From the NCBI GenBank assembly GCA_963924565.1, contig OZ004608.1, positions 34,348,001-34,412,000 on the forward strand: a stretch of DNA of 64,000 nt. The letters are read 5' to 3'. The notes beneath the pieces are model-generated. The model was not told the DNA's origin. It made no database searches and worked only from the letters and a program-made list of their open reading frames with translations. How positions within the stretch are numbered: position 1 is the first letter of the stretch; each line of letters opens with the position of its first letter. Made by a program: the position numbers and the translations under genes. This DNA is from Ascidiella aspersa (lineage: Eukaryota). Below, in pieces: positions 4,416 to 11,583 of the stretch.

Positions 4416-7400
4416 ATGATTTTCAGGGCGTTGATTTTGGCCGGATTACTGCATTTGGACTTAATTTCGGCGCAATTCTGCCAATGCGATTCGGTTCACC
4501 CTCAGGATATATTGTGCAAAGCCGCGTTCGGTAAGTATGTGTGTTACCTGACTATTCAGGAAACGGGATATTTATGGCATCGGCCGAGTATATTTTATTT
4601 TGCGGTATTCTGCTACCGGTTGAAGTGGCAAATGCAACCTAATATATCCGGTTAAGCGACAAATTGCCTTAATTTAGGGTAAAAAAAAACTATTGCATTG
4701 CCTTAATAAATCTGCTTTAATATGGAAAATTGTTATTTTGTCATAACAAATCAAAGCTTGGACATAAGAGTTTAGGCTTTGAAAAAATTAACTAATGCCT
4801 AAAAATATTTAGATGGAACTCTAACGTAAAAGTTAGTTATTTGAAATGTTAAGCCATTGCTTTCCTTAACACACTATTGCTTTCACATAACGAGTTATTG
4901 CTTTGACATAATAAATCAGTGGCTATAATCATCACAAATAAATGCTTAGATTAACGATTTTATATGCCATATAGCAGTTGTGTTTTGAGCAATCTAGTGC
5001 TTATAATGTTGGCAAAATTATCATATTCAACCCGGTATAGTGATAGAAAGCTTAATTAATTTTTATTTGGGATAACCGTATACGGGAAATCGTCCGTAAA
5101 AATCACTCATATATAGCACCCTTTCTGACACACCATTGGCACTTTTCATGCTAAGCAATGAAAATAACTTTTGCACAATTATTAGTATTAAACCTTTATT
5201 ACTTTTACAGTTGGGATTATTCGAATATCGCGCCATGAAATACCTTCTTTAAACGACAGTACAGATGAAACGTACAGCCCAGCACGGGCCGAAATGATCA
5301 CGGTATGTTGTAGGCTGTTTGAATGTATGTAAATATGTAACACTTGTGTAGTCAGATTGCAAAACCAATTCAGAAAGCTTTGGATAAATTTTTAATCATA
5401 CGTTGCCTTGTGGAGCAAATTATTTTTTTTATATATATTTTAGGGTTGTTTCACAACGTTTTACCAGTAGTGTTTTACAGCTACTGCCTGCTGACTTGTT
5501 TAAAAAGAACTTATTTGCGAGTTACTTATATCGTAATTAAAACAACACACAAAAATAAAATAATAGAAATAGTCGCATTTTAATAAAACCTGGAGTTCTT
5601 TATGCCAAAAAAATCACAAGTTATTCATGACCAATCTAGAACCATTGAAATCAATTTTTCGTCCTGCCAAACCTTAAAAGTGCATAAAATTCAGGACAAC
5701 GCGGCAATAAAAAATAGCCCAGGTGGTTTTCCAGCTTTCAGAGCGCCTTTAAAGGTTTTAAATCACCGCAAAAACCGAAGACGCGTAGGTGCGACTTGTC
5801 TCGCAAGTCGAACAAGACGATTATTTGCGGCGAAATGCTGTTGTGTGCTTTAATTGTGCGACAAGACACCACGTTTGAACTGCTTGGTCTATTAAGGCCA
5901 ACACGTGGCCTGCTTGCTGCTCGCGTCGTTAACTTGCTTATTTGTTGTTTGCTAAACGTGACCATATTAGAAACACTGGAAAATCAATTTCTTTCCAGGC
6001 CCAGTGGTGTTAAAATTTACCGACTTTAGGACTTTAAAACGTAAATTGAGGCAATGATTTAAGAAAAACCGCTTACCGAATGAATGTACCGATTTTAAGA
6101 GTTCAAACCAAATTTAGAGTTAAACATGATTTTAAGTGTTTGAAACGTATATTGTGATTTAAAGAAATTTCGCTTACCGAATGAAACAACGCTTGTTGTC
6201 GTTGATCCAAGAAGTTATTTGAGAAACGGGTTTTAATTCAACTTTCCCGTGTCAAAATTTCAGTCAGGCCACTATCTACATAAGGGTAAAAATTTGAGAA
6301 AATACAATAATTAATACGTAAAGCTTTTAATATTGACGTAGACCTAGCTATAGGGTTAATAAACGAACTTACTAAAAGTTTAAAAAACTCGCTCTTAATT
6401 CAATTTCTCGTTTAACCGTGTATTTTGAGAGAAAACCGTTTAAACAGCTGTAGTGCTTTAACGTCAATGGACGACAATGCATTTTAGATTACCCTGTGGG
6501 GCCACAGCAGATACAAATTGAAGGGGCATTCTCACGGCTAAATCTAAAATGCTAAAATTTAAATAGAATTTCAGCCATGATTTGAGATCGAATTTAGCTA
6601 TCTACCTTGAAAGGTAAATGTATTAAAAAATAATATAAAAATGGAAACTGAACTTTCTGACGTTACAGCAAATTTTACAGACCGTTCGGTTTCCATGGAC
6701 CCCAAATTGAGAAGCCGCGTCTTCGAAAGAAAATCCGGCAAAAGTTATCCTTTATTTTGCTTGTCAAAAAAATATCAATGTTTATTTTGGTAAAAATATG
6801 CTCCTAAATAGTTAAGTATTTTCGTGATAGACATGCTCTGTTTCCTTATGACCAGTTCCTTTAACGTTTTTTTTAGATATACAAGGGACGGTACCAGGAC
6901 TTTGATGAAGGGGAACACGTGAACATCTACACTCCAGCCAAGCAAGGAGATTGTGCCATGGAGTTGGAAGAAGGCTATCAGCTTGTATCAGGTAGGAATA
7001 TCACATAATATAGGATTTGTGTGTATCCAGTATCAGTGGCGTATAAACAGCCGAAAATTTTGAGGTAGGTAATATTTTAAACTTGAACAATTACTAGTAA
7101 TTGGTTTGGGACACTGCCTATCAATGCATAAAAAGACAAGATTTGCTGCGTAGGCAAACTATATTTAATAACTTGACATGGAAACCGCTACCTCAAAGGG
7201 AAAAATCGACGTATGTTTAGACAATATTTGAGAGGGCATGGCCCCTGTGGACCCTCCCTATCGGTAGTTCGATACTAGGGTGGTATCGGTGTCGATCCGA
7301 TTTTAATTAATTTGTTGATTTTGGCCATGATTTCCAACACGGCGATTTCCATCATATTTAAGACAACATAGTAAAACGTAAAGGTATTAAAATTAAATAA

Positions 7401-10400: not shown

Positions 10401-11583
10401 GAAAACGAATTCGAGAAACCTGACAGTCCAAGACGCACCCAAGAAGAATTTAAAGCTGGTCAATAAATTAAACAACGCAGAAGTTACAACAACTAGTTTG
10501 GCGAAAATCGAAACTGATAAGGTCAAAAGCACAGTGGGAATTGTTACGCCTACAAAAAGCATTATGAAGGCCACTGATTTAACGACAACAAATGCTGAAA
10601 TGGCACAACCAGTCACCAGGCCACAGATTGTGATGGAAACTAGAATGCAAGCCCATCACGCGGCACCGTCGTGGAGAAGAAGATTTACTACTGTGGAGTC
10701 AATCACAACTACAGGGAGCACCAATGCCAATACAGAACCCAAAACTGTATTAAGTACAACCGATAAAAATACCATGATCAGCAGTCCAAAAGCCACAACA
10801 AAAACATCGACTACATATAAACCCACTACAACGGAATCTACCACTACCGTTGTAGTAGCAACAACAGAAAAAACTACAAATAGCCCCCCTACAACGGAAA
10901 CAATTGGCATACAACCAATAACAGAAAAATCAACAGCAATTCTACCTGTCGCAACGCAAACTACCAGTACTATTGTACCAACAACTGAAATGCCTACAAC
11001 AGAAAAGTCCACTGCTAAAGTGGTGACAACGAACACAGAAATATCCACAAACTTGTTACCTACCACAAACAAAGTCATTACTACTGTTCTACCAACAGAA
11101 ACAGAGCAGACCACTATCAAGGTACCTAAAACAACGCAAGCTACAACCACTATTTTACCAACAACAACGACAACAGAAAGAACAACAGTAAAACCTACAA
11201 GAGAAATGTCAACTACCATGGAGCCTACAACTACAAAAATTCCGTCAAGTACAACAAAAACTACAGAACAGGCCATCATTAGTTTACCCACAACAATAAA
11301 CAAAAAAACAACTACAGAAAAGCTGCAAACAACTACAACAAAAGCAAAACCTACAACCACCAGAAAAACAACGCCTGAATTGCTAGCAAGAATAATCGAG
11401 GTTAGTTCAACCACAGAAGCTACAACTACAACTCCGAAAACGACCACCAAAGTGAACATGCTCGATGATATAAACATGGAATTCGACGAAGAACATCATA
11501 AGATGTTGGAAGATCAACTTCCGCGTGGAAGCATTGTAAAACTTTTGATGAAAGTGGTTTGGCCTGATAGTTGGAAACGATAA
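4416..11583 (+). CDS. TIMP: Secreted TIMP (tissue inhibitor of metalloproteinases / NTR fold) protein with long C-terminal Thr-rich mucin-like tail; 5 coding exons, 618 aa
   Basis: Exons 4416-4530, 5211-5302, 6877-6991, 9677-9843, 10216-11583; all GT-AG, phases 1,0,1,0 join in frame. Signal peptide MIFRALILAGLLHLDLISA, then TIMP signature CQCDSVHPQDILC, followed by IYKG..NIYTPAKQGDC..YQLVSG, LLIRNCD..YSKGCESCRI and SACVPSDEGMCEW, collinear with recalled TIMP motifs. The last exon continues into ORF 10291-11583 (Thr/Pro/Glu/Lys-rich). Confidence 0.9.

What the first reader, a model, noticed from the sequence alone, without database searches (positions are those of the whole stretch)
4416..11583. 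TIMP fused to a ~420-aa mucin-like stalk
Seen: the TIMP domain ends at ...SACVPSDEGMCEW and the same exon runs on through a basic linker, a WRRRF polybasic site, about 260 aa of T/P/E/K-rich sequence (PTTE/TTEK) and a short acidic-then-hydrophobic end. Only 10 Cys are present (6 in the N-domain, 4 instead of 6 in the C-domain). Known: canonical TIMPs are about 200 aa with 12 Cys, and sea-cucumber tensilin is a TIMP-like protein repurposed for collagen stiffening. Inference: a lineage-specific O-glycosylated matrix, mucus or tunic protein that tethers a TIMP head, possibly released by convertase cleavage.
Basis: partly seen in the sequence, partly recalled or inferred. Interest (0 to 1): 0.75.

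Follow-up and report, generated by a model that had tools for sequence, protein, structure and literature searches.

The report
TIMP-like gene with mucin tail
A sea-squirt gene appears to encode a divergent relative of the tissue inhibitors of metalloproteinases whose last exon runs on into a long threonine-rich, mucin-like tail; the neighbouring twin gene has only a short version of that tail, and neither production of the tail nor its function has been tested.

Summary
On the + strand, five exons with canonical splice sites (4416-11583) give a 618-codon reading frame. It encodes a signal-like start, a C-x-C TIMP-type head with 10 Cys, then 426 residues after the final C-E-W in the same exon. 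That tail is a basic linker, a 253-aa tract with 38% Thr, and a 42-aa acidic-then-amphipathic end.

TIMP homology is real but distant. No single exon reaches Pfam's threshold. Exons 1 and 4 match canonical TIMP exons of the same genome at E about 2e-4.

New here: a tandem paralog about 7 kb upstream has the same exon plan, 12 Cys and a 121-aa Pro/Thr-rich tail. Its tail ends in the same in-frame motif (1 of 2000 shuffles score as well). Canonical TIMPs in this genome stop 9-26 residues after C-x-W. So this looks like a lineage-specific "mucinised" TIMP-like gene.

All 5 listed variants in exons 3 and 4 are synonymous. RNA evidence is too thin to prove the tail is transcribed. The WRRRF site is not a furin consensus. 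No homolog of the tail was found in any protein search, and four literature searches found no TIMP-mucin fusion. No earlier scan note mentions TIMP.

Verdict: new variant of a known kind, moderate interest.

The parts
4416..4530 (+). Exon 1: ATG, hydrophobic signal-like segment, then C-Q-C...H-P-Q...C (3 Cys). Donor G|GTAAGT, phase 1.
   Evidence: Pfam TIMP positions 3-18, E=0.3. tblastn to canonical TIMP first exons of the same genome: E=2.1e-4, 2.8e-4 and 7e-3.
5211..5302 (+). Exon 2 (inferred): V-G-I-I-R-I-S... 31 codons including the split codon, no Cys.
   Evidence: One of 60 phase-compatible open candidates. It has the best acceptor and donor of the 8 contexts printed. It starts like paralog exon 2 (VG.[IV]RI[ST]) but was not among the top 6 by alignment score. 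No RNA support.
6877..6991 (+). Exon 3: IYKGRYQDF...YTPAKQGDC...YQLVS, 1 Cys.
   Evidence: 62% identical over 37 aa to the paralog, E=1.3e-12. 4 of 4 listed variants are synonymous.
9677..9843 (+). Exon 4: RPYHGGLLIRNC...GCESCRIK..., 3 Cys; spans the N-/C-domain boundary.
   Evidence: 45% identical to the paralog, E=1.5e-12. Matches a canonical TIMP exon in L001 at E=2.3e-4. The A+B profile's only PDB hits are two TIMP-2 chains, E about 0.5. Two RNA reads cover it. 1 of 1 listed variant is synonymous.
10216..10302 (+). Exon 5, first 29 codons: end of the TIMP-like C-domain (3 Cys, ends C-E-W).
   Evidence: 53% identical to the paralog over 35 columns.
10303..10695 (+). Basic linker (aa 30-160 of exon 5, net +13), including WRRRF at 10672-10686.
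   Evidence: No significant similarity to the paralog's tail (930 of 1000 shuffles reach its score). No homologs.
10696..11454 (+). Mucin-like PTS tract: 253 aa, 38% Thr, 7% Ser, 8% Pro, with degenerate repeats.
   Evidence: Only a self-hit in the own genome at E<=0.001, 36 candidates scored. Possible length or sequence variant 10745->10990 in DNA contigs.
11455..11583 (+). C-terminal module: acidic 21 aa, then P-R-G-S-I-V-K-L-L-M-K-V-V-W-P-D-S-W-K-R and stop TAA.
   Evidence: The last 20 aa align with the paralog's C-terminus: score 37, reached by 1 of 2000 shuffles against the last 45 aa and by 35 of 1000 against the whole exon.
12302..12314 (+). First AATAAA signals downstream of the stop (12302 and 12309); possible polyadenylation signal, giving a 3'UTR of about 0.7 kb.
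   Evidence: Pattern only, no RNA support.

Best explanation
The gene (A) is an intact, lineage-specific paralog of the TIMP family. Its C-terminal extension has been 'mucinised'.

Shown:
- Five exons with canonical splice signals give one 618-codon frame.
- The head is distantly but demonstrably homologous to canonical TIMP genes of the same genome.
- A tandem paralog (B), about 7 kb upstream, shares the exon plan.
- B has a 121-aa Pro/Thr-rich tail that ends in the same hydrophobic-V-W-P-x-(x)-W-basic motif. In A, about 300 extra residues lie between head and end motif, mostly a 253-aa Thr-rich tract.

Inferred:
- The protein is secreted.
- The Thr-rich tract is densely O-glycosylated and forms a stiff, hydrated, protease-resistant spacer.
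- The basic linker and the conserved amphipathic/basic C-terminal motif attach the molecule to matrix, tunic or mucus polyanions, or to a partner protein.
- The TIMP/NTR head is thereby displayed at a distance, either to bind a metalloproteinase locally or as a non-inhibitory binding module. The residue before Cys1 is Phe, so signal peptidase probably cuts two residues earlier. In vertebrate TIMPs an N-terminal extension abolishes inhibition (recalled knowledge).
For: - ORF length is far beyond chance and is the longest in the window.
- All four acceptors and four donors are canonical.
- Paralog B matches exons 3, 4 and the start of exon 5 at E=1.3e-12, 1.5e-12 and 2.4e-8. Its exons 1 and 2 were located with the same phases.
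- The in-frame C-terminal motif is shared by A and B: 1 of 2000 shuffles. The frame therefore seems to be kept through the whole Thr-rich tract.
- Canonical TIMP last exons of the same genome stop 9, 21, 21 and 26 residues after C-x-W.
- TIMP homology: E about 2e-4 for exons 1 and 4; B exon 4 against Pfam TIMP, E=0.0022, positions 100-138; the only PDB hits are TIMP-2.
- 5 of 5 listed variants in exons 3 and 4 are synonymous third positions.
- X2 contigs carry 18 differences plus 2 indels in 762 nt of intron 3, against at most 4 differences in 1168 nt of exon 5.
- The Thr-rich tract has no other copy in the genome, so it probably grew in place. That matches the 'mucinisation' described for mammalian PROL1 to MUC10 (PMC9417175, passages read).
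Against: - RNA support is minimal. About 6% of the RNA data set was read. Two reads lie on exon 4; there are fragments at 10049-10245 and around 11.2 kb, and no joint reached the listing threshold. Transcription, splicing and the 3' end of the tail are unproven.
- No single exon of A passes Pfam's TIMP threshold. The six-frame PF00965 search of the genome did not hit A at E<=10.
- A has 10 Cys, not 12.
- DNA contigs of two samples show a form at about half depth that skips 244 bases (10746-10989) inside the tract. If it is a plain deletion it shifts the frame.
- No ortholog was found anywhere, so conservation beyond the paralog pair is unknown.
- Signal-peptide cleavage, glycosylation and attachment are inference only.
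Confidence: 0.6

Rival explanations
1. The tail is not part of the main product. Transcripts end or splice soon after the C-E-W codons, and the long open frame is kept for another reason or is a recent accident.
For: RNA depth in 10246-11033 was zero in the part of the run that was read. There is a donor-like G|GTATGT at 10288-10293. No homolog of the tail exists in the databases.
Against: 455 open codons against a maximum of 225 in 2000 shuffles. The in-frame C-terminal motif is shared with the paralog. The paralog also reads on for 121 aa after C-x-W. A/B homology continues past the donor-like site through W-V-K. RNA depth was near zero over the whole gene, not just the tail.
Confidence: 0.15
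2. A decaying or polymorphic duplicate: a TIMP copy that has lost two Cys and its proper signal cleavage site, is barely expressed, and carries null alleles.
For: 10 Cys against 12 in the paralog. Phe at -1 before Cys1. Very low RNA coverage. A half-depth form skips 244 bases, not a multiple of 3, in two samples.
Against: All exons are open with canonical splice sites. 5 of 5 listed variants in exons 3 and 4 are synonymous. Differences are far fewer in exon 5 than in intron 3. The two missing Cys flank the conserved D-E-C and could be one lost disulfide pair. The tool marks what lies between the two sides of the 244-base skip as 'not known', so it may be a divergent allele and not a deletion.
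Confidence: 0.15
3. A cell-surface TIMP: the Thr-rich tract is a stalk and the C-terminal hydrophobic end is a GPI signal or membrane anchor.
For: The architecture head-stalk-hydrophobic end resembles membrane mucin-stalk proteins. The paralog ends in a 15-residue moderately hydrophobic stretch followed by RRRKR.
Against: The last 18 residues of A contain 3 Lys, 1 Asp and 1 Arg, with mean Eisenberg hydrophobicity 0.07. The hydrophobic run is only about 11 residues. That is too short and too charged for a transmembrane helix or a GPI signal, judged against recalled criteria.
Confidence: 0.08
4. One reading: the TIMP head is released from the stalk by proprotein-convertase cleavage at WRRRF.
For: Three consecutive Arg at aa 154-156 of exon 5. 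The paralog carries RRRKR near its end.
Against: No R-x-[KR]-R motif anywhere in the exon-5 product; P4 is Trp. Similarity of this site to the paralog's terminal motif is not significant (367 of 2000 shuffles). Cleavage there would leave the 125-aa basic linker on the head.
Confidence: 0.12

Closest known systems
Canonical TIMPs (Pfam PF00965), including the cluster at G000:C2:31.606-31.734 Mb of the same genome
   Same: Signal-like start, C-x-C...H-P-Q...C at the N-terminus, a G-C-x-x-C domain boundary and a C-x-W end. Exons 1 and 4 match canonical exons at E about 2e-4.
   Different: 10 Cys instead of 12. Phe precedes Cys1. No exon reaches the Pfam threshold. 426 residues follow C-x-W, against 9-26 in the canonical genes.
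Tensilins of sea cucumbers (TIMP-like stiffening proteins; PMC10381214, passages read)
   Same: A TIMP-like head with a C-terminal extension beyond the last canonical Cys that combines a hydrophobic part and a Lys/Arg-rich part. Proposed matrix-binding role rather than, or besides, inhibition.
   Different: Tensilins have 2-3 residues between the first two Cys, two extra Cys in the extension, and no Thr-rich tract. Here there is one residue between the first two Cys, no Cys in the tail, and a 253-aa mucin-like tract. The review finds tensilins only in holothurians, with tensilin-like proteins in echinoids; this genome is probably a tunicate's.
'Mucinisation' of secreted proteins (PROL1 to MUC10 in rodents; PMC9417175, passages read)
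   Same: 5' and 3' ends stay homologous to a non-mucin relative that is rich in proline. The middle gains Thr/Ser-rich repeats within an exon.
   Different: The precursor here carries a folded TIMP-like domain. The repeats are old and degenerate: TRF finds none, and the best family has 4 copies at 63-79% identity.
TIMP-3 (matrix-bound vertebrate TIMP); recalled knowledge, no call
   Same: The idea of a TIMP held in the matrix through basic residues.
   Different: TIMP-3 has no added domain. Its binding surface lies within the normal fold.

Membership tests
TIMP (PF00965) | Match to the Pfam TIMP profile above the gathering score (23.1 bits) | tested here: inconclusive
   Tested exon by exon only; the joined model was left out by rule. 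A exon 1: 11.3 bits, E=0.3. A exons 3, 4 and 5: none. Exon 2 was not scanned. The six-frame genome search gave 13 matches, none in this gene. Paralog exon 4: 18.2 bits, E=0.0022.
TIMP (PF00965) | Homology to bona fide TIMP genes | tested here: met
   Exon 1 against canonical first exons: E=2.1e-4, 2.8e-4 and 7e-3. Exon 4 against the canonical exon in L001: E=2.3e-4. This was tblastn against 13 loci, about 41 kb. The A+B exon-4 profile's only PDB hits, 2 of 177,635 sequences, are TIMP-2 chains at the colinear position, E about 0.5.
TIMP (PF00965) | Twelve conserved Cys (six disulfides) | tested here: not met
   10 Cys. The paralog has 12. The two missing in A flank the conserved D-E-C (and the exon-4 alignment).
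TIMP (PF00965) | C-x-C at the start of the mature chain, with Cys1 as the free N-terminus | tested here: inconclusive
   C-Q-C is present straight after a hydrophobic segment. However, -1 is Phe (paralog: Asp), whereas canonical genes of this genome have Ser or Ala at -1. No signal-peptide predictor was available. The judgement rests on the recalled -3/-1 rule.
TIMP (PF00965) | Inhibition of metalloproteinases | not testable with these tools
   Needs recombinant protein and an enzyme assay.
Mucin-domain (PTS) proteins | Long tract rich in Thr/Ser with Pro | tested here: met
   253 aa with T 38%, S 7%, P 8%. 232 overlapping 50-aa windows have S+T>=35% and P>=4%, spanning aa 141-423 of exon 5. 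The thresholds are my own choice.
Mucin-domain (PTS) proteins | Tandem repeats | tested here: inconclusive
   TRF found only a 29-nt CAA run. The repeat finder gave 14 short degenerate families, the best with 4 copies of 43 nt at 63-79% identity.
Mucin-domain (PTS) proteins | Dense O-glycosylation | not testable with these tools
   No predictor or data were available. Only one N-x-S/T sequon in exon 5.
Gel-forming mucins | VWD, CysD or cystine-knot domains | tested here: not met
   Pfam found no family in the 455-aa exon-5 product at E<=10. There is no Cys in the tail.
Tensilin | 2-3 residues between the first two Cys; C-terminal hydrophobic then hydrophilic region with two extra Cys (PMC10381214) | tested here: not met
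   One residue lies between the first two Cys (C-Q-C). The tail has no Cys.

The most novel reading that the evidence does not exclude
The A/B pair is a tunicate-specific offshoot of the TIMP family that has given up protease inhibition: blocked N-terminus, altered disulfides. It has been re-used as a structural glycoprotein. Gene A would be a TIMP-derived mucin of the tunic or of the feeding mucus, whose NTR head cross-links matrix fibres while the glycosylated tract holds water. That would be a convergent parallel to sea-cucumber tensilin, reached by a different added module.
Probability: 0.2. Interest if true: 0.7.

Novelty: new variant of a known kind. Interest (0 to 1): 0.45.

Why it matters
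TIMPs are normally compact two-domain inhibitors of about 200 residues. A natural TIMP-family head on a 250-residue mucin-like spacer would matter in three ways.
- It would show that the NTR/TIMP fold can be recruited into glycoprotein matrix or mucus components.
- It would give a clean paralog pair, short-tailed B and long-tailed A, for studying how a mucin domain grows inside an existing exon.
- It would offer a candidate for local control of metalloproteinases, or for cross-linking, in the tunicate tunic or mucus.

Its weight is limited. The gene is so far seen in one genome only, expression is barely documented, and fusions of mucin-like tracts to other domains are common in this genome according to earlier notes.

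Tried and rejected
- **Pfam and PDB, exon by exon.** Pfam on A exons 1, 3, 4 and 5. PDB sequence searches on exon 4, exon 3 and the A+B start of exon 5. None gave a significant TIMP hit. The only hit for exon 4 alone was an unrelated telomerase-associated protein at E=1.8.
- **Internal duplication of the terminal module at WRRRF.** Rejected as unsupported: 367 of 2000 shuffles reach the score. The MAFFT global alignment that suggested it is not reliable there.
- **Homology between A's linker and B's tail.** Not significant: 930 of 1000 shuffles.
- **Exon 2.** Ranking the 60 candidates by similarity to paralog exon 2 did not favour 5211-5302. I keep it on splice-signal quality, absence of Cys and the shared start motif, and mark it inferred.
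- **Orthologs and tail homologs.** All blank:
  - The search for homologous proteins on exon-5 residues 1-160, residues 396-455 and the whole exon. That tool sees only proteins of 250-796 aa for this query.
  - HMMER against 1.84 billion representatives with residues 1-160.
  - Two metagenome scans.
  - No tool here reaches other tunicate genomes, so absence of orthologs is not shown.
- **Literature** (listings and abstracts seen). No TIMP-mucin fusion found. Supplements were closed, and the tensilin/TIMP alignments of PMC10381214 (files S16, S17) could bear on C-terminal extensions.
- **scan_promoters_terminators.** It uses bacterial consensus patterns and says nothing about an animal gene. 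Disregarded.
- **tRNA scan of the intron-3 repeat.** None found.
- **Capture of the Thr-rich tract from another mucin gene.** Rejected: only a self-hit in the genome.
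Full report
**What is there**

The window is AT-rich (about 36% G+C) animal DNA with no N. On the + strand I find five open pieces with canonical splice signals:
- 4416-4530
- 5211-5302
- 6877-6991
- 9677-9843
- 10216-11583

All four acceptors are pyrimidine-rich and end in CAG or TAG. The donors are GTAAGT, GTATGT, GTAGGA and GTGAGT. Together they hold 1857 bases, that is 618 codons plus stop. The spliced product was not assembled for any search or fold.

Exon 2 is an inference.
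- It is one of 60 open, phase-compatible candidates between exons 1 and 3.
- It has the best splice contexts of the 8 I printed.
- It has no Cys and begins like the paralog's second exon.
- An alignment ranking against that exon did not put it in the top 6.

**The observation**

Exon 5 reads from I-Y-A-D-E-C through S-A-C-V-P-S-D-E-G-M-C-E-W and continues in frame for 426 more residues. The continuation consists of:
- a basic linker (aa 30-160, net +13), with W-R-R-R-F at aa 153-157;
- a 253-aa tract with 38% Thr, 9% Lys, 8% Pro, 8% Glu and 7% Ser;
- a 21-aa acidic stretch (net -7);
- a 21-aa amphipathic, basic end.

The open frame of 455 codons compares with a mean of 85 and a maximum of 225 in 2000 shuffles of the same bases. 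It is the longest ORF of the window: 5 ORFs reach 130 aa, and the runner-up is its own antisense mirror. Thr is encoded by all four codons (ACA 58, ACT 28, ACC 16, ACG 11). There are no clean DNA repeats. So this is an old, degenerate repeat tract, not a recent microsatellite.

**Is the head a TIMP?**

Taken exon by exon, the evidence is weak but consistent.
- Pfam gives only exon 1 a TIMP match: E=0.3, profile positions 3-18.
- A six-frame PF00965 search of the whole 308.6-Mb genome found 13 exon matches. Ten are in a cluster at C2:31.606-31.734 Mb, 2.6 Mb upstream. None is in this gene.
- Against those canonical loci, exon 1 matches three first exons (E=2.1e-4, 2.8e-4, 7e-3). Exon 4 matches the best canonical exon at E=2.3e-4, 30% identity over 47 aa (a small database of 13 loci).
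- The paralog's exon 4 matches Pfam TIMP at E=0.0022, positions 100-138.
- A two-sequence profile of exon 4 has TIMP-2 chains as its only PDB hits, at the colinear place but with E about 0.5.
- Exon 4 alone, exon 3 alone and the start of exon 5 gave no TIMP hit in the PDB.

I conclude that this is a divergent member of the TIMP superfamily. It is not a canonical TIMP.

**The paralog**

Searching the genome with the first 160 residues of exon 5 found a second gene (B) just upstream of the window: E=3.7e-4, 35% identity. I fetched 40 kb upstream.

B has the same five-exon plan and phases:
- exon 3: 62% identical, E=1.3e-12;
- exon 4: 45% identical, E=1.5e-12;
- start of exon 5: 34% identical over 80 aa, E=2.4e-8.

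B keeps 12 Cys. A lacks the two that flank the shared D-E-C. This reads most simply as loss of one disulfide. The mapping to vertebrate numbering is recalled, not tested.

Profile and protein searches find only A and B in this subfamily, plus one weak hit inside the canonical cluster.

B's last exon also reads on after C-Q-W, for 121 residues rich in Thr (16%), Pro (11%) and Ala. It ends ...A-V-W-P-K-W-F-R-R-R-K-R-W-S-E.
- The best local alignment of B's last 40 residues with all of A's exon 5 falls on A's very end, P-R-G-S-I-V-K-L-L-M-K-V-V-W-P-D-S-W-K-R. The score is 37, reached by 35 of 1000 shuffles.
- B's last 28 residues against A's last 45 also score 37, reached by 1 of 2000 shuffles.

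By contrast, four canonical TIMP last exons of this genome stop 9, 21, 21 and 26 residues after C-x-W. There, 11 rows matched my pattern. I took four as true last exons by eye. A fifth is cut by the end of its locus, and the others are a different exon or chance.

The simplest history has three steps.
1. An ancestral TIMP-like gene had a short Pro/Thr-rich tail and a terminal motif.
2. It duplicated in tandem.
3. The tail of A grew by about 300 residues between head and terminal motif.

The tract has no other copy in the genome at E<=0.001, with 36 candidates scored, so it was not captured from another mucin gene. This mirrors the 'mucinisation' described for mammalian PROL1/MUC10, where the ends stay homologous and the middle gains Thr/Ser repeats (PMC9417175, passages read).

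**Is the tail expressed and constrained?**

One RNA data set of the same species label was available as raw reads. About 6% of it was read.
- 45 reads were laid. 43 lay only partly on the stretch, and most belong to a 30-base high-copy element in intron 3.
- On the gene itself there are two reads over exon 4, both carrying the G allele at 9756.
- There is depth 0.25 in the bin 10049-10245, and 0.14 and 0.09 in the bins 11034-11230 and 11231-11427.
- All of these have the first mate on the minus strand. That fits a + strand RNA in a common stranded library.
- No joint reached the listing threshold.

This shows that the gene is at most weakly expressed in that material. It neither proves nor refutes transcription of the tail.

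DNA contigs of two samples of another study give indirect evidence.
- The five variants listed in exons 3 and 4 (6918, 6933, 6957, 6963, 9756) are all synonymous third-position changes.
- X2 contigs show 18 differences and 2 indels in 762 nt of intron 3, against at most 4 differences in the 1168 nt of exon 5 they cover.
- Thirteen further variant rows were not shown, so I cannot say whether the exon-5 variants are synonymous.

Against constraint: both samples contain, at about half depth, a contig that joins 10745 to 10990 (a skip of 244 bases). The tool marks what lies between as 'not known'. A plain deletion would shift the frame. A divergent or length-variant allele would not. The reference-like contig there also has about half depth, so the region is heterozygous or mixed. 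This stays unexplained.

**How it probably works**

- The N-terminus has a hydrophobic segment followed by I-S-A-Q-F and then C-Q-C.
- Canonical TIMPs of this genome have Ser or Ala directly before Cys1. A has Phe and B has Asp.
- By the -3/-1 rule (recalled), cleavage after Ala is likelier, leaving two extra residues.
- In vertebrate TIMPs the free amino group of Cys1 is needed for inhibition (recalled). The head may therefore be a binding module and not a classical inhibitor. This is inference.
- The Thr-rich tract would be O-glycosylated in the secretory pathway and act as an extended spacer.
- The basic linker and the conserved C-terminal motif are the likeliest attachment parts.
- The end is too short and too charged for a membrane or GPI anchor: mean hydrophobicity 0.07 over 18 residues, with a hydrophobic run of about 11.
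- W-R-R-R-F lacks Arg at P4, and no R-x-[KR]-R exists in the exon-5 product. Convertase release is therefore not favoured.

**Organism and context**

- Earlier notes of this scan call the genome a sea squirt's.
- As a partial check, I found a GH6 glycosyl-hydrolase match above Pfam's cut-off in the genome (28.1 bits).
- That family is reported in tunicates as a horizontally acquired gene (PMC7464555, listing abstract only).

**Novelty**

- No protein in three word-indexed searches resembles the tail. The exhaustive HMMER search used only the first 160 residues of exon 5 and was also blank. Two metagenome scans found nothing.
- These tools do not reach other tunicate genomes, and the first tool is blind outside 250-796 aa.
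- Four literature searches gave no TIMP-mucin fusion.
- The nearest described case is tensilin, whose C-terminal extension has a hydrophobic and a Lys/Arg-rich part with two extra Cys (PMC10381214, passages read). That is a different module in a different phylum.

**Verdict**

I rate this a new variant of a known kind, of moderate interest, pending transcript evidence.

Noticed in passing
L017:9150 to L019:7216 (G000:C2:34337150-34345216, + strand), about 7.2 kb upstream of exon 1: Tandem paralog B: the same five-exon plan, 12 Cys, C-F-C start preceded by Asp, and a 121-aa Pro/Thr/Ala-rich tail ending in V-W-P-K-W-F-R-R-R-K-R-W-S-E.
   Followed up: yes
G000:C2:31606000-31734000 (loci L001-L008, L010, L013, L024): Cluster of canonical TIMP genes on both strands, with 10 of the 13 PF00965 exon matches of the genome. 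They have short C-termini and Ser or Ala before Cys1. The number of genes was not worked out.
   Followed up: partly
window 7271-7300 (intron 3): A 30-base core with word depth of about 6,570 and 14,870 in the two DNA samples, against about 50 and 100 nearby. It carries most of the RNA reads laid, on both strands, with loose ends on both sides. It looks like a very high-copy short element. No tRNA was found there.
   Followed up: partly
window 10745-10990: In both DNA samples, a contig at about half depth joins these two places (skips 244 bases; what lies between is not known). The reference-like contig is also at half depth. Possibly a length or sequence variant of the Thr-rich tract.
   Followed up: partly
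window 12084-12145: A second joint (skips 60 bases) in one DNA sample, downstream of the gene, and a short repeat-like place at 12381-12411 with loose ends in RNA and DNA reads.
   Followed up: no
L019:8900-9950 (between paralog B and the window start): Several copies, about 240 bases apart, of a unit whose translation repeats almost exactly (for example ...LKRVGIKFSSEIYRGFFLKPTDFRGLLSQAILLLRVI). A tandem repeat array in the intergenic region.
   Followed up: no
window 4203-4246: T-rich tract of about 40 bases, roughly 170 bases upstream of the start codon.
   Followed up: no
window 52544-53266 (- strand) and 19994-20560 (- strand): A 240-aa open piece with coiled-coil-like sequence and a 188-aa Ser/Arg/Asp-rich open piece. 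Probably exons of other genes.
   Followed up: no
G000:C5:19613851-19614090: Glycosyl-hydrolase family 6 match (28.1 bits, above Pfam's cut-off), consistent with a tunicate genome.
   Followed up: partly
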